Under the pieces are notes generated by a model. That model was given only the letters and a program-made list of their open reading frames with translations. It did no database searches and was not told the DNA's origin. A program made the position numbers and the translations under genes. A stretch of DNA of 51,165 nt from Octopus bimaculoides (Eukaryota): contig NC_068985.1 in the NCBI RefSeq assembly GCF_001194135.2, forward strand, positions 15,149,754 to 15,200,918, in the 5' to 3' direction. Of this stretch, positions 26,996 through 47,076 are shown piece by piece. Numbering within the stretch: position 1 is the first letter of the stretch; every line of letters begins with the position of its first letter.

Positions 26996-27068
26996 GGGGT
27001 ATTAGCTCAGGTGGTAGAGCGCTCGCTTAGCATGCGAGAGGTACCGGGATCGATGCCCGGATTCTCCA
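26996..27068 (+). tRNA. tRNA-Ala-AGC: tRNA-Ala(AGC), near-intact (U5/U68 mismatch in acceptor stem)
   Basis: 73-nt GGGGTATTAGCTCAGGTGGTAGAGCGCTCGCTTAGCATGCGAGAGGTACCGGGATCGATGCCCGGATTCTCCA; cloverleaf, G3:U70, anticodon loop TTAGCAT, T-run ~27 nt downstream. Confidence 0.9.
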
Positions 27069-27237
27069 ATATATATACGTTATACATAAACACTTTCTTT
27101 TTATGCACGTAATTGTTGAGTTTCATGTATACATGTGTGTGTGTGTGTGTGTTTAGGTTTGTGTGAGTGTGTATATTCACTGAGTGAAAACTCAGCGGCC
27201 AATGAAACGAAAAAACAAACATTCACTAATTCATACT

Positions 27238-27310
27238 TTTTGCCGAACCCTGGGACGTAAATAAACCAACACCGATCGACAAGTGGTGGTTGTGGTGAAG
27301 GCCAAGCACA
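27238..27310 (-). mobile_element. SINE family A, internal fragment
   Basis: TTTTGCCGAACC..GGGACGTAAATAAACCAACAC. Confidence 0.65.
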
Positions 27311-27579
27311 CGCGCGCGTCCGCTCAAATACACAAACACACACACACACACACTCCCATGTGTATGAGTGTGTGTATGTGTGCGTGTATTAATTTATTCA
27401 ATGCTCGCTCTCAACACTAAATGCACCCTTATAACAGTTTGATCTTCACGAAGTTGGCTAAAAACTTCCTATATTTGAAGTATTTCGGCGGTAATGATAA
27501 ATCACCGAATATAATACATAAAAACAAATTTACTAGAACTGAACCAAAAATGAGCAATAAAGACAAAAATAATGACAAT

Positions 27580-27652
27580 TGGAGAATCCGGGCATCGATC
27601 CCGGTACCTCTCGCATGCTAAGCGAGCGCTCTACCATCTGAGCTAATTCCCC
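27580..27652 (-). tRNA. tRNA-Ala-AGC: tRNA-Ala(AGC), intact
   Basis: Reverse complement equals the window consensus GGGGAATTAGCTCAGATGGTAGAGCGCTCGCTTAGCATGCGAGAGGTACCGGGATCGATGCCCGGATTCTCCA; T5 terminator ~11 nt downstream. Confidence 0.97.
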
Positions 27653-27748
27653 TGATACAGTGTCAAGCCTTTTAGTATTTAAATATATAAGCGTGAACTG
27701 ATTACCCTGCTTGTTTTTTGGTGCTGTTCTTGAATGTGTTTTCTCTAT

Positions 27749-27890
27749 TGTTTCAGTCGCTGGACTGCGGCAATGCTGGAGCAAGACTTTAAAGGATTTG
27801 CTCGACCAAATCAACCCCAGTACTTACCTTTTATGTTTAGTACGTAGTTTATCGTTTTTCTTTTGCCGAAGCGCTTGGTTGCGGGGACGT
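27749..27890 (-). mobile_element. SINE family A, 3' fragment
   Basis: TGTTTCAGTC...ATGCTGGAGCA... Confidence 0.7.
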
Positions 27891-28706
27891 GAAAAAAAAA
27901 AAGCCCACANNNNNNNNNNNNNNNNNNNNNNNNNNNNNNNNNNNNNNNNNNNNNNNNNNNNNNNNNNNNNNNNNNNNNNNNNNNNNNNNNNNNNNNNNNN
28001 NNNNNNNNNNNNNNNNNNNNNNNNNNNNNNNNNNNNNNNNNNNNNNNNNNNNNNNNNNNNNNNNNNNNNNNNNNNNNNNNNNNNNNNNNNNNNNNNNNNN
28101 NNNNNNNNNNNNNNNNNNNNNNNNNNNNNNNNNNNNNNNNNNNNNNNNNNNNNNNNNNNNNNNNNNNNNNNNNNNNNNNNNNNNNNNNNNNNNNNNNNNN
28201 NNNNNNNNNNNNNNNNNNNNNNNNNNNNNNNNNNNNNNNNNNNNNNNNNNNNNNNNNNNNNNNNNNNNNNNNNNNNNNNNNNNNNNNNNNNNNNNNNNNN
28301 NNNNNNNNNNNNNNNNNNNNNNNNNNNNNNNNNNNNNNNNNNNNNNNNNNNNNNNNNNNNNNNNNNNNNNNNNNNNNNNNNNNNNNNNNNNNNNNNNNNN
28401 NNNNNNNNNNNNNNNNNNNNNNNNNNNNNNNNNNNNNNNNNNNNNNNNNNNNNNNNNNNNNNNNNNNNNNNNNNNNNNNNNNNNNNNNNNNNNNNNNNNN
28501 NNNNNNNNNNNNNNNNNNNNNNNNNNNNNNNNNNNNNNNNNNNNNNNNNNNNNNNNNNNNNNNNNNNNNNNNNNNNNNNNNNNNNNNNNNNNNNNNNNNN
28601 NNNNNNNNNNNNNNNNNNNNNNNNNNNNNNNNNNNNNNNNNNNNNNNNNNNNNNNNNNNNNNNNNNNNNNNNNNNNNNNNNNNNATATATATATATATAA
28701 AACACA

Positions 28707-28907
28707 CACGTGTGTGTCTGTTTGTCCCACACTAGCGCTTGACAAGAGGTGTTGGTCTTTTTACGTCCCTGAAACGTGGCAGTTAAGCAATAGAGACTGA
28801 CAGAATAAGTACCAGGTTTGAATAAAAATAATTCTACTAAAAATTCTTCAAGGCGGTGCTCCAGCATGGCCGCTGTCTAATTACTGAAGCAAGTAAAAAA
28901 TAAAAGA
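28707..28907 (+). mobile_element. SINE family A, 3' half
   Basis: AAGGCGGTGCTCCAGCATGGCCG...GCAAGTAAAAAATAAAAGA. Confidence 0.75.
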
Positions 28908-29026
28908 TATCAATCAATAACTGAATATATTTAGTAAAACAAAAGAATTGAACTCGAGGAAAATATTGTTATTGTAAGAACTGGAGAAATATGAAAAAAA
29001 ATAAAAACAGCTTAAACATTATCGAT

Positions 29027-29099
29027 TGGAGAATCCTGGTATCGATCCCGGTACCTCTCGCATGCTAAGCGAGCGCTCTACCATCTGAGCTAATTCCCC
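29027..29099 (-). tRNA. tRNA-Ala-AGC: tRNA-Ala(AGC), near-intact (one T-stem mismatch)
   Basis: Consensus body except T-arm CCGGG-ATCGATA-CCAGG; T-run ~20 nt downstream. Confidence 0.88.
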
Positions 29100-29952
29100 T
29101 GTTGACAACTGTGTCTTTAATATCTGTTAGTATTTGCATATTTAAACGTCGGCTGATTATGCCGTTTGCTTTTAGTCTTAACTGGATACGTTTCTACAAA
29201 CGGGTCAACCGGGAGAGATGATTATATATTATACAAATGTTTATATGTATATCTACACGTTTACACATACATCACACACACACACACATACATATTCTTT
29301 TCTACTCAAAGCACATGGCCTGAAATTTTGGGGGAGGGGGCCAGTAGATTAAACCGACCCAGTACGTAACTGGTACTTAATTTATCGNNNNNNNNNNNNN
29401 NNNNNNNNNNNNNNNNNNNNNNNNNNNNNNNNNNNNNNNNNNNNNNNNNNNNNNNNNNNNNNNNNNNNNNNNNNNNNNNNNNNNNNNNNNNNNNNNNNNN
29501 NNNNNNNNNNNNNNNNNNNNNNNNNNNNNNNNNNNNNNNNNNNNNNNNNNNNNNNNNNNNNNNNNNNNNNNNNNNNNNNNNNNNNNNNNNNNNNNNNNNN
29601 NNNNNNNNNNNNNNNNNNNNNNNNNNNNNNNNNNNNNNNNNNNNNNNNNNNNNNNNNNNNNNNNNNNNNNNNNNNNNNNNNNNNNNNNNNNNNNNNNNNN
29701 NNNNNNNNNNNNNNNNNNNNNNNNNNNNNNNNNNNNNNNNNNNNNNNNNNNNNNNNNNNNNNNNNNNNNNNNNNNNNNNNNNNNNNNNNNNNNNNNNNNN
29801 NNNNNNNNNNNNNGAATAACTTAGGGATTTCTTTTTTTTTTTTAAGAAGACTAAGAGAAAAAGATGTTTTATATGACACATTCTACCAGTGTTCCAAGTT
29901 TCAAAGTGTTTCGTTAAGAAAATACTGTGGCCCCACCTTTTAAAATAGATCC

Positions 29953-45436: not shown

Positions 45437-45570
45437 TATATCATAATTTTTTTTTTCAATCCCGGATTTAACAATTAAAGTACATTTGTTGGAGTACATG
45501 TTATTAAAAATAAAAGTACATTTATTGAAGTATCCAACAGACTAGAAATGGTTAACATAAGTAGCTTTAT

Positions 45571-45643
45571 TGCAATGTCCACGAACAAATACCGGTGCCC
45601 CTCGAATGCAAAGTGAGCTCGCTATCCTCTGAGCTAATGCACC
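45571..45643 (-). pseudogene. tRNA-Ala(TGC) pseudogene
   Basis: CTCGAATGCAAAGTGAG anticodon arm and CTGAGCTAAT D-arm, in array spacer context. Confidence 0.68.
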
Positions 45644-46021
45644 GAATTGTGCTCATCGGTTTTGTTATTCTTTTACTTTTACTCTTTAATCTTTTACTTG
45701 TTTCAGCCAAGCAGCTGCGGTCATGCTGGAGCACCGAATATAAAACTTTTTTAAATCTCAGAATTTTCAAAGTAAATGAAAATGAAAGCAAGTAATGGAT
45801 CATTGAAAACAAAAGTAGGTTTATTAGTGATGCATAAGTTTTTGTTTCAAATGGGATAGCCTAGTCTTAGATTTATACAAGGGTCGATAAAAGAAGTACC
45901 ATTTGAGCACTAGCATCCATGCAATCGATTTACCTCCGCCAAAATTGTTGGCCTTGTGCCAAAATTTGAAACATGATAACTCAAACAAATATAGTAGAGT
46001 TAACAATATTATAAGATAATG

Positions 46022-46094
46022 TGGAGAATCCGGGTATCGATCCCGGTACCTCTCGCATGCGAAGCGAGCGCTCTACCATCTGAGCTAATTCCCC
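46022..46094 (-). tRNA. tRNA-Ala-CGC: tRNA-Ala(CGC), intact
   Basis: Reverse complement has anticodon loop TTCGCAT; otherwise identical to 47004-47076; first T4 is ~58 nt downstream. Confidence 0.92.
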
Positions 46095-46140
46095 ATCAAC
46101 GATTGATTCTGTTTTCTTAATACTATATTAATAAATGCGC

Positions 46141-46577
46141 CAAGAGTTTATTAACAAATGCGTCGAGTTGGCAGAAACGTTAGCACGCCAGGCGAAATGC
46201 TTAGAAGTATTTCGTCTGTCTTTATCTTCTGAGTTCAAATGCTACCGAGGTCGACTTTGCCTTTCATCCTTTCGGGGTTGATTAAATAAGTACCAGTTAC
46301 GCACTGGTTTCGGTATAATCGACTTAATCCGTTTGTTTGTCTCTACTGTGTGTAGCCCCTTGTGGGCAGTAAAGAATTAAGAATCGTTAGCTCACCGGGC
46401 AAAATGCTTAGCAATATTTCGTCTGTCTTTATCTTCTGAGTTCAAATGCTACCGAGGTCGACTTAGCCTTTCATTTTTCAAGGGACGATAAATGAAGAAC
46501 TAGTTGAGCACTTGGGTCCATGTAATCGACCTACCCATCCCCCGAAATTGCTGGCCTTGTGTCAAAATTTGAAACAT
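46141..46577 (+). mobile_element. SINE family B dimer between tRNA genes
   Basis: Two monomers joined at AAGAATTAAGAATCGTTAGC. Confidence 0.82.
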
Positions 46578-46624
46578 AATAACTAAGACAAATATATTAG
46601 AATTAGCAAAATGATTGGGTAATG

Positions 46625-46697
46625 TGGAGAATCCGGGTATCGATCCCGGTACCTCTCGCATGCAAAGCAAGCGCTCTACCATATGAGCTAATTCCCC
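46625..46697 (-). tRNA. tRNA-Ala-TGC: tRNA-Ala(TGC), near-intact
   Basis: Loop TTTGCAT; D-loop G>T change and a U:G pair in the anticodon stem; T4 at ~+14. Confidence 0.85.
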
Positions 46698-46768
46698 ATC
46701 TCTTACTGATTCGCCTTTTCTTATGTATTAATACTTTATTAATAAATGTGTTAATACTTCGTTAATAA

Positions 46769-46945
46769 ACGTGGCGAGCTGACGGAATCGTTAGCACTTC
46801 GGGCAAAATGCTTAGTGGTCGAGGTCGACTTCGCCTTTCACCCTTCCGGGGTCAATAAAATATATGCTATTTGAGCTCTGGGGTCGATGTTATCGGCATA
46901 ACCCGCCCTCAAAACTGCTGGCCTTGTGCCAAATTTGAGACCATT
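46769..46945 (+). mobile_element. SINE family B, internally deleted
   Basis: GTGGCGAGCTGACGGAATCGTTAGC...GCCTTGTGCCAAATTTGA. Confidence 0.78.
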
Positions 46946-47003
46946 TATTAATATAGTATATATTTATTAATATAGTATTAAGAAAAGCTAAGTAACATCG
47001 TAT

Positions 47004-47076
47004 GGGGAATTAGCTCAGATGGTAGAGCGCTCGCTTTGCATGCGAGAGGTACCGGGATCGATACCCGGATTCTCCA
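47004..47076 (+). tRNA. tRNA-Ala-TGC: tRNA-Ala(TGC), intact
   Basis: GGGGAATTAGCTCAGATGGTAGAGCGCTCGCTTTGCATGCGAGAGGTACCGGGATCGATACCCGGATTCTCCA; T4 at +5. Confidence 0.96.

What the first reader, a model, noticed from the sequence alone, without database searches (positions are those of the whole stretch)
26996..47076. All three Ala anticodons (AGC, TGC, CGC) sit on one tRNA body
Seen: 46022-46094 (CGC) and 47004-47076 (TGC) differ only at the wobble base. Both differ from the AGC consensus (27580, 40494, 43293) only at the wobble base and one T-loop base. Established: this GGGGAATTAG...GGATCGAT body is the AGC-type alanine tRNA of vertebrates, whose TGC/CGC genes usually use a GGGGATGTAG...GGTTCGA body; alanine identity depends on G3:U70, not the anticodon, so wobble switches stay chargeable. 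Inference: the isoacceptor set here arose by repeated anticodon switching inside one cluster.
Basis: partly seen in the sequence, partly recalled or inferred. Interest (0 to 1): 0.72.

Follow-up and report, generated by a model that had tools for sequence, protein, structure and literature searches.

The report
Alanine tRNA gene cluster with wobble switches
This is an ordinary nuclear cluster of alanine tRNA genes and about 25 decayed copies, where single wobble-base changes between local duplicates produced the three anticodons on a tRNA sequence that many other organisms also use for all of them.

Summary
46022-46094 (CGC) and 47004-47076 (TGC) differ only at base 34. Each differs from the AGC consensus only at base 34 and T-loop base 60. 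No gene touches an assembly gap, and the gap-free block 42144-48031 alone carries all three anticodons.

It holds about 39 tRNA-Ala copies: 12 intact, 3 marginal and about 24 relics. Most lie head to tail with a period of about 188 bp, in two inverted arms (32.4-35.2 kb minus strand, 35.5-40.4 kb plus strand). T34 is the majority state, in 27 of 37 readable copies.

A tree built from flanks alone makes the two AGC genes inside the array sisters (bootstrap 0.99) among TGC units. It places CGC 46022 as sister of TGC 46625 (1.0), with TGC 47004 outside. That gives two local switches, T to A and T to C, both starting from TGC.

The premise that this body is AGC-specific is not general. A metagenome scan hit its 120-locus limit with TGC/CGC on this body type. 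Eight contigs carry AGC beside TGC or CGC on one body.

Isoacceptor shifts and tRNA clusters rich in pseudogenes are already described. This is a new member of a known kind, of low interest.

The parts
26996..27068 (+). tRNA-Ala(AGC), G60. Two body changes: A5T breaks the 5:68 pair, and D-loop A16G.
   Evidence: (51.1 bits)
27580..27652 (-). tRNA-Ala(AGC), the consensus body with G60. T4 terminator at +11. Shares an upstream motif (...GGTAATCAG..CTTAAATATTTAAATAC...) with 29027, 40494, 40983 and 43293.
   Evidence: (57.5 bits)
29027..29099 (-). tRNA-Ala(AGC) with A60 and C63A (one T-stem pair broken). Its flanks belong to the same family as the G60 AGC genes.
   Evidence: (51.6 bits)
32401..35220 (-). 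Minus-strand arm of the tandem array. At least 13 units of about 188 bp, each a tRNA-Ala copy plus a spacer of about 115 bp. Nearly all units carry T34 and most are decayed; 32401 is a CGC relic. It contains an internal segmental duplication, 32900-33514 to 34733-35328, at 78% identity.
33325..33397 (-). Marginal tRNA-Ala(TGC): 29.0 bits, 6 body changes, 3 broken pairs.
35148..35220 (-). Marginal tRNA-Ala(TGC): 38.9 bits. Changes in the D-stem and T-stem break 3 pairs.
35325..35345 (.). Junction of the two inverted array arms. A plus-strand unit is cut down to the last 13 nt of the tRNA (ACTCGGATTCTCC), followed by a normal spacer.
35459..40393 (+). Plus-strand arm of the tandem array. At least 16 detected units, interrupted by SINE-like insertions and by the gap at 39728-40178.
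35459..35531 (+). Decayed copy whose anticodon triplet reads TAC (Val). 13 body changes, damaged A box, 35.3 bits. Most likely a pseudogene.
35647..35719 (+). Intact tRNA-Ala(AGC), A60, inside the TGC array. Sister of 38151 by flanks.
   Evidence: (49 bits)
36805..36877 (+). Intact tRNA-Ala(TGC), A60, an array member and the best-scoring copy. T4 terminator at +11.
   Evidence: (64 bits)
38151..38223 (+). Intact tRNA-Ala(AGC), A60, inside the TGC array. Related to 35647 by the segmental duplication 35341-35776 to 37837-38281 (75% identity).
   Evidence: (59.3 bits)
40494..40566 (-). tRNA-Ala(AGC), consensus body, G60. Flanks are 79-85% identical to those of 43293, in inverted orientation.
40983..41055 (+). 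tRNA-Ala(AGC), G60, with two changes in the variable region.
   Evidence: (55.1 bits)
43293..43365 (+). tRNA-Ala(AGC), consensus body, G60.
44868..45643 (-). Two decayed TGC-type relics (44868-44941 and 45571-45643), each with a SINE-like tail about 30 nt upstream.
46022..46094 (-). Intact tRNA-Ala(CGC), A60, no body change. The first T4 run lies only at +58. By flanks it is sister of 46625 (TGC).
   Evidence: (60.6 bits)
46625..46697 (-). tRNA-Ala(TGC), A60. Changes: D-loop G15T, and C29T, which leaves a G-U pair.
   Evidence: (55.9 bits)
47004..47076 (+). Intact tRNA-Ala(TGC), A60, no body change. T4 terminator at +5. Outgroup of the 46022/46625 pair in the flank tree.
   Evidence: (62.2 bits)
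35763..36095 (.). SINE-like interspersed repeat inserted into the array. A second copy lies at 37029-37372 in inverted orientation (88.7% identical), and at least 10 more lie elsewhere in the window. Not part of the tRNA unit.

Best explanation
This is a nuclear, Pol III-transcribed tRNA-Ala gene cluster that evolves by birth and death.

A unit of about 188 bp, made of tRNA-Ala(UGC), a T4 terminator at +11 and a spacer, was amplified head to tail. Part of the array was then inverted. Most units decayed into relics. A few copies stayed almost unchanged while their flanks drifted to about 80% identity, which points to purifying selection and/or gene conversion.

Within this family a single base change at position 34 turned a TGC unit into AGC. 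That copy was then duplicated, giving 35647 and 38151. Another single change turned a TGC copy into CGC (46022). A separate set of AGC genes (27580, 29027, 40494, 40983, 43293) has its own conserved upstream flank and carries the same body.

AlaRS reads G3:U70 and not the anticodon, so each switched gene should still be charged with alanine. A34 would be deaminated to I34 by ADAT2/3. The cluster then supplies I34, U34 and C34 decoders for all GCN codons.

The shared body is the common eukaryotic tRNA-Ala body and is not AGC-specific.

Shown here: the sequences, the array structure, the flank relationships, the contrast between conserved genes and diverged flanks, and the occurrence of the same arrangement elsewhere. 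Inferred: the polarity of the switches (by parsimony), expression, charging and the I34 modification.
For: - Copies and anticodons. T34 is found in 27 of 37 readable copies, A34 in 8 and C34 in 2.
- Spacing of units clusters around 188 bp (140-232 bp between adjacent detected units), and the spacer is shared by the units, including those at 35647, 36805 and 38151. Array units are 64-78% identical overall.
- NJ tree built from flanks only, tRNA excluded. 35647(AGC)+38151(AGC) has bootstrap 0.99 and sits among TGC units. 46022(CGC)+46625(TGC) has 1.0. The trio with 47004(TGC) has 1.0.
- Intact pairs are 94.5-100% identical in the tRNA against 76-85% in 100-nt flanks (Fisher p from 7e-3 to 1e-7). 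Relic pairs show no excess: 68-89% against 78-85%.
- All intact copies keep G3:T70, all stem pairs, the A and B boxes and a downstream T run.
- The same body with TGC or CGC is common elsewhere, and it sits next to AGC on 8 unrelated contigs.
- Isoacceptor shifts are documented: 44 cases, 39 of them at the first anticodon base (PMC3923123). Homogeneous tRNA clusters rich in pseudogenes are documented (PMC2888827). Mouse tRNA-Ala(AGC) with this 5' sequence is an ADAT2/3 substrate (PMC8216470).
Against: - Polarity rests on parsimony. The placement of the AGC pair within a particular TGC subgroup has bootstrap below 0.5.
- Gene conversion among copies could mimic or erase point switches.
- The relationship between the G60 AGC genes and the array is unresolved, because no flank homology was found.
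- Expression, charging and modification were not tested.
- The CGC gene has no T4 run before +58.
- The source organism was not identified, and its other tRNA-Ala genes are unknown.
- The taxa behind the metagenome contigs are unknown, and many of those hits look viral.
Confidence: 0.75

Rival explanations
1. The body is ancestrally AGC-only, and TGC and CGC genes arose here by repeated A-to-T and A-to-C switches, a lineage-specific replacement of a separate TGC/CGC body.
For: In human and mouse the GGGGAATTAGCTCA... body is reported only for AlaAGC. The G60 AGC genes are the most uniform copies in the window, three of them identical.
Against: T34 is the majority and older state in the array. 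The AGC pair and the CGC gene are nested among TGC units in the flank tree. TGC and CGC on this body type are widespread elsewhere, including an exact match of the window's AGC consensus with T34 (L088) and contigs carrying AGC, TGC and CGC together.
Confidence: 0.1
2. No switching took place in this window. The three isoacceptor lineages are anciently separate, and their bodies are kept alike by shared constraints and by gene conversion that happens to spare position 34.
For: The shared body is common across many organisms. tRNA families are known to evolve in concert (PMC4981973 abstract). The G60 AGC genes share no flank homology with the array.
Against: Flanks place CGC 46022 as sister of TGC 46625 (bootstrap 1.0) and the AGC pair inside the TGC array with the array spacer on both sides. 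For duplicates that share flanks, a base-34 change after duplication is the simplest account. Conversion tracts would have to stop on both sides of a single base.
Confidence: 0.1
3. The array is a non-functional tRNA-derived satellite or SINE family, and none of the copies is a working gene.
For: About 24 of 39 copies are decayed. The region is full of SINE-like repeats.
Against: Units are strictly head to tail with a shared spacer, and they have no A-rich tail. Twelve copies score 49-64 bits with all pairs intact (three of them with a single broken pair) and are far better conserved than their flanks. Neutral satellites do not show that contrast.
Confidence: 0.04
4. Assembly artefact: the near-identical copies are collapsed or duplicated haplotypes, or mis-scaffolded contigs.
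For: There are fifteen N runs in the window, six of them inside the finding's range. Inverted pairs such as 40494/43293 lie on either side of a gap.
Against: All three anticodons lie in a single gap-free block, 42144-48031, and both array arms and their junction lie in gap-free block 32336-39727. Paralogue flanks are only 76-85% identical, far more diverged than alleles would be.
Confidence: 0.02

Closest known systems
Isoacceptor anticodon shifts in eukaryotic tRNA gene families (Rogers & Griffiths-Jones 2014, PMC3923123; Rogers et al. 2010, PMC2997554; Velandia-Huerto et al. 2016, PMC4981973)
   Same: A single substitution at the first anticodon base between homologous tRNA genes, recognised through flanking sequence. 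It changes the codon set but not the amino acid, and it occurs in a redundant gene family. Here there are two such events.
   Different: Those studies compared orthologues between species. Here the evidence comes from paralogues within one locus, so polarity is by parsimony only. A-to-T and T-to-A changes are rarer in their tables than U/C changes. That statement comes from the paper's text and was not examined in detail.
Homogeneous tDNA clusters and tandem tRNA arrays with many pseudogenes (Bermudez-Santana et al. 2010, PMC2888827; Arabidopsis tRNA-Cys 0.4-kb repeats, PMC10701932)
   Same: Many copies for one amino acid within 1 kb of each other, mostly in parallel orientation. Functional genes are mixed with decaying ones, and turnover is rapid.
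   Different: This array has a short unit of about 188 bp and two inverted arms that meet inside a truncated unit. The intact genes are a small minority.
Human tRNA-Ala gene families (as described in PMC4694795)
   Same: One 5' body (GGGGGTGTAGCTCAGTGGTAGA) is shared by AlaAGC, AlaCGC and AlaTGC genes, so three Ala anticodons on one body is already seen in human. The GGGGAATTAGCTCA... body also exists in human.
   Different: In human the GGGGAATT body is reported only with AGC. In this window that body carries all three anticodons.
Metagenome contigs L003, L008, L073, L076, L081, L088 and L098 (unknown organisms)
   Same: AGC sits next to TGC and/or CGC on one body with the same anticodon arm and the GGGATCGAT T-loop. 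In L003 AGC and CGC differ only at base 34. L098 carries all three anticodons. L081 is a tandem run with a 152-bp period of five AGC and one TGC. L088 TGC equals the window's AGC consensus apart from T34.
   Different: Acceptor stems and flanks differ from the window, and the taxa are unknown. No long array of decayed units is seen on these short contigs.

Membership tests
Eukaryotic cytosolic tRNA-Ala gene | Cloverleaf that scores above the Rfam tRNA gathering threshold | tested here: met
   12 copies score 49-64 bits against a threshold of 29, and 3 more score 29-39 bits. ARAGORN tRNA-Ala genes.
Eukaryotic cytosolic tRNA-Ala gene | G3:U70 wobble pair and A73 discriminator (AlaRS identity set) | tested here: met
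   G3:T70 is present in all 14 best copies. The last base of each is A. Charging itself is not testable here.
Eukaryotic cytosolic tRNA-Ala gene | Internal Pol III A and B boxes, downstream T-run terminator, no encoded CCA | tested here: met
   The A box reads TAGCTCAGATGG and the B box reads GGATCGAT(A/G)CC. A T4 run lies at +5 to +30 in 11 of 12 intact genes; the CGC gene has its first only at +58. The bases after A73 are never CCA.
Isoacceptor anticodon shift | The two genes are homologous beyond the tRNA, that is, they share flanking sequence | tested here: met
   46022 against 46625: downstream 83%, upstream 77%. 35647 and 38151 against array TGC units: 79-82%. Flank-only tree bootstrap 0.99-1.0. 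Background for random 70-mers: mean 0.32, maximum 0.64.
Isoacceptor anticodon shift | The difference lies in the anticodon and keeps the amino-acid identity | tested here: met
   Only base 34 differs between 46022 and 47004. AGC, TGC and CGC are all Ala anticodons.
Isoacceptor anticodon shift | Both states are functional, expressed tRNAs | not testable with these tools
   Only indirect evidence is available: high scores, intact stems, and conservation far above that of the flanks.
Isoacceptor anticodon shift | Polarity fixed by an outgroup | tested here: inconclusive
   Parsimony on paralogues favours T to A and T to C. No orthologous locus from another species could be obtained.
Tandem tRNA gene array | Head-to-tail units of constant period with homologous spacers | tested here: met
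   Adjacent units lie 140-232 bp apart, clustering around 188 bp. A shared spacer is seen in the MAFFT alignment. Self-BLAST gives 64-78% identity. TRF missed the array because the units are too diverged.
tRNA-derived SINE | tRNA-like head plus an unrelated body and an A-rich or simple-repeat tail; dispersed copies bounded by target-site duplications | tested here: not met
   Units abut one another in register, have no tail, and end in a Pol III terminator at +11. A different SINE-like repeat is inserted among them.
   At least 120 metagenome loci carry T34 or C34 on this body type. In eight contigs these sit beside AGC.

The most novel reading that the evidence does not exclude
In this genome the I34 (AGC) decoder genes inside the array were recruited out of a U34 (TGC) array by a T-to-A switch. 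They were then kept intact while about 20 sister units decayed. If the species has no other tRNA-Ala body, its whole alanine decoding set is one gene family whose isoacceptor ratio is adjusted by wobble-base switching within a single cluster. That would be a natural counterpart of the anticodon switching seen in yeast experimental evolution.
Probability: 0.25. Interest if true: 0.4.

Novelty: new member of a known kind. Interest (0 to 1): 0.2.

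Why it matters
The locus gives a clean within-locus example of how a redundant tRNA family changes its isoacceptor mix. Intact AGC, TGC and CGC genes differ at one base and sit on flanks that have drifted by about 20%, next to roughly two dozen neutral relics that act as an internal clock. This is useful as an illustration and for annotation: most copies here are pseudogenes, and anticodon counts from this region should not be taken at face value. It does not change what is known about tRNA-Ala identity or anticodon shifts. 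The supposed oddity, an AGC body carrying TGC and CGC, turns out to be common outside vertebrates.

Tried and rejected
- Tandem Repeats Finder on 31.8-47.5 kb found only microsatellites. The 188-bp units are too diverged, so the array was defined with short-word BLAST and MAFFT instead.
- A first all-against-all BLAST of 600-nt flanks was swamped by microsatellites and overlapping windows. It was replaced by semi-global alignments of 70-115-nt flanks with a random-sequence background.
- Identifying the organism through the reverse-transcriptase fragment at 47396-47884 returned only unnamed ENA/JGI fragments at 54% identity or less. The source stays unidentified. A literature search for a piece of that repeat found nothing.
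- Literature searches for the exact tRNA strings of the protostome-type body returned nothing. A search for cephalopod nuclear tRNA-Ala papers found only mitochondrial and genome-announcement papers.
- No metagenome locus shares flanks with the window beyond about 20 nt, so no orthologous locus was available to fix polarity.
- The sub-threshold miRNA and snoRNA matches lie on microsatellites and score far below their gathering scores. They were rejected as chance.
- A60 as a marker of TGC/CGC genes was rejected, because three AGC genes also have it.
- The TAC (Val) copy as a mistranslating tRNA was rejected as unlikely. It has 13 body changes, a damaged D-arm and two broken acceptor pairs.

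Full report
**Observation**

ARAGORN finds 12 tRNA-Ala genes between 26995 and 47077: eight AGC, three TGC (36805+, 46625-, 47004+) and one CGC (46022-). Rfam's tRNA model scores the same twelve at 49-64 bits against a gathering score of 29. It adds two weak copies, 35148- at 38.9 bits and 35459+ at 35.3 bits.

- 46022 (CGC) and 47004 (TGC) differ only at base 34.
- Each differs from the AGC consensus (27580, 40494 and 43293, which are identical to each other) only at base 34 and at T-loop base 60.

A60 is also not specific to TGC/CGC, because AGC genes 29027, 35647 and 38151 have it too.

**Gaps**

The runs of N are listed. No intact gene touches one; the closest edge is 258 nt from a gene. 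Gap-free block 42144-48031 contains AGC (43293), CGC (46022) and TGC (46625, 47004). Gap-free block 32336-39727 contains AGC (35647, 38151) and TGC (36805, 35148). The observation therefore does not depend on what lies in the gaps. Order, orientation and copy number across blocks remain unverified. Paralogue flanks are 76-85% identical, far more diverged than two haplotypes would be.

**What else is in the locus**

BLAST with a 7-nt word and the consensus tRNA finds about 39 copies. Besides the 12 intact and 3 marginal genes (33325- reaches 29.0 bits), about 24 are relics at 70-89% identity with many broken stem pairs.

Most copies lie head to tail. Adjacent units are 140-232 bp apart, clustering around 188 bp. 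They form two arms:
- a minus-strand arm at 32401-35220;
- a plus-strand arm at 35459-40393.

The arms meet at about 35325-35345, where a plus-strand unit is cut down to the last 13 nt of the tRNA. Two more relics lie at 44868 and 45571.

The MAFFT alignment of units shows a shared spacer of about 115 bp, with a T4 terminator at +11 that persists even in decayed units. Units are 64-78% identical overall, and there are internal segmental duplications. TRF missed the array because it is this diverged. The longer spacings are explained by insertions of a SINE-like repeat of about 335 bp that also occurs at 10 or more other places in the window.

At the anticodon position, T34 occurs in 27 of 37 readable copies, A34 in 8 and C34 in 2. 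TGC on this body is therefore old in this lineage and is the ground state of the array.

**Relationships of the copies**

Flanks fall into three families:
1. The G60 AGC genes plus 29027, with a conserved upstream motif.
2. The array units. These include the intact TGC gene 36805 and the two intact AGC genes 35647 and 38151, which have the array spacer on both sides.
3. The trio 46022 (CGC), 46625 (TGC) and 47004 (TGC).

A neighbour-joining tree built from flanks only, with the tRNA excluded, gives:
- 35647+38151 with bootstrap 0.99, lying among TGC units;
- 46022+46625 with bootstrap 1.0;
- those two together with 47004 with bootstrap 1.0.

The AGC pair also corresponds to the segmental duplication 35341-35776 to 37837-38281 at 75% identity.

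By parsimony, two wobble changes account for the intact genes. One T-to-A change occurred before that duplication, and one T-to-C change occurred on the branch to 46022. A further C34 is seen in relic 32401. The relation between the G60 AGC genes and the array cannot be resolved, because no flank homology was found.

**Evidence that the intact copies are maintained**

For intact pairs the tRNA is 94.5-100% identical, while 100-nt flanks are 76-85% identical (Fisher p from 7e-3 down to 1e-7). For relic pairs the tRNA part is no better conserved than the flanks: 68-89% against 78-85%.

All intact copies keep every stem pair or lack at most one. They also keep G3:T70, the A and B boxes and a downstream T run. 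The CGC gene is the exception, with its first T4 only at +58.

This pattern fits purifying selection and/or gene conversion acting on a minority of functional genes in a birth-and-death family. Expression itself was not tested.

**Is the body AGC-specific?**

GGGGAATTAGCTCA... is reported as AlaAGC (PMC4694795 and PMC8216470). The first of those papers also states that the other human body, GGGGGTGTAGCTCAGTGGTAGA, is shared by AlaAGC, AlaCGC and AlaTGC. Three Ala anticodons on one body is therefore not new in itself.

The premise was tested directly by scanning metagenome contigs for this D-arm and the GGGATCGAT T-loop with a non-A wobble base. These hold about 75 distinct tRNA-Ala TGC or CGC sequences, many with the identical anticodon arm. 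Close matches include:
- L088, identical to the window's AGC consensus except for T34;
- L067, which differs from the window's TGC at 2 bases;
- L006 and L077, CGC versions 4 bases away.

Many hits sit in dense mixed tRNA clusters that look viral. Eight contigs, however, carry AGC next to TGC and/or CGC on one body:
- L003: AGC and CGC differ only at base 34.
- L098: AGC, TGC and CGC together.
- L081: five AGC and one TGC in a tandem run with a 152-bp period.
- L008, L073, L076, L088 and L047.

Their flanks are unrelated to the window and their taxa are unknown. The body is thus a common eukaryotic tRNA-Ala body, and the vertebrate split into two bodies is not the general rule.

**Comparison with what is known**

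Isoacceptor anticodon shifts are documented. One study reports 44 cases across primates, flies, nematodes and yeasts, 39 of them at the first anticodon base and spread over 14 of 19 amino-acid identities (PMC3923123). Homogeneous tRNA clusters with many pseudogenes and rapid turnover are documented across eukaryotes (PMC2888827). This locus is a further example of both.

**Verdict**

Local wobble switching is real, but it runs from TGC, involves about two events, and happens on a body that is not AGC-specific.
- Novelty: a new member of a known kind.
- Interest: low.

The source organism was not identified. My recollection that the SINE-like repeats resemble octopus SINEs is untested.

Noticed in passing
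window 35459-35531 (+): A decayed tRNA-Ala copy whose anticodon triplet reads TAC (Val) while G3:T70 is retained. If it were expressed and charged it would put Ala at GUA codons. It has 13 body changes, a damaged D-arm and A box, two broken acceptor pairs, and scores only 35.3 bits, so it is most likely a pseudogene.
   Followed up: partly
window 35763-36095, 37029-37372, 14372-14695, 44972-45357, 39530-39727, 43953-44336, 2077-2365, 17528-17830 and others: A SINE-like interspersed repeat of about 335 bp, with copies 66-93% identical, is scattered through the window and has inserted into the tRNA array. Its tail lies about 30-35 nt upstream of relic units 37407, 44868 and 45571. From memory it resembles an abundant octopus SINE, which would make the window cephalopod. 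This is untested.
   Followed up: partly
window 34650-34770 and 46160-46200: A second repeated element (GGCGGTGAGCTGGCAGAAACGTTAGC...GCGAAATGC...) appears next to array unit 34768, and in reverse orientation upstream of 46022. It is probably another interspersed repeat.
   Followed up: no
window 35325-35345: The two inverted arms of the array join inside a tRNA unit; only the last 13 nt of a plus-strand tRNA remain. This marks the breakpoint of an inverted duplication within contiguous, gap-free sequence.
   Followed up: partly
window 35459 vs 37963: In one pair of relic units the tRNA part is less conserved (68%) than its flanks (81%). This might reflect the elevated mutation rate reported for transcribed tRNA genes, or it might be chance.
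   Followed up: no
loci L009, L026, L042, L071, L096, L104, L107, L120 and others: Many metagenome hits are dense clusters of 8-20 different tRNA genes (Leu-taa, Ile-tat, Gln-ttg, Arg-tct, Asn-gtt and others) spaced about 80-100 bp apart. They look like tRNA islands of giant viruses or phages, and they carry an Ala-TGC of the same eukaryote-like body type.
   Followed up: no
window 47396-47884 (+), 31035-31403 (-), 41593-41880 (-): Fragments of transposable-element genes: a reverse-transcriptase C-terminal part (Pfam PF00078 in its homologues), a 122-aa ORF that looks retroelement-like by eye (not searched), and the N-terminal helix-turn-helix part of what looks by eye like a Tc1/mariner-type transposase (not searched), cut by the gap at 41884.
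   Followed up: partly
window, throughout (e.g. 42144-42207, 43640-43770, 44610-44663, 45197-45273): Very frequent TA, TG and ATAT/TGTA microsatellites, often next to assembly gaps. They produce spurious sub-threshold miRNA and snoRNA matches in Rfam.
   Followed up: yes
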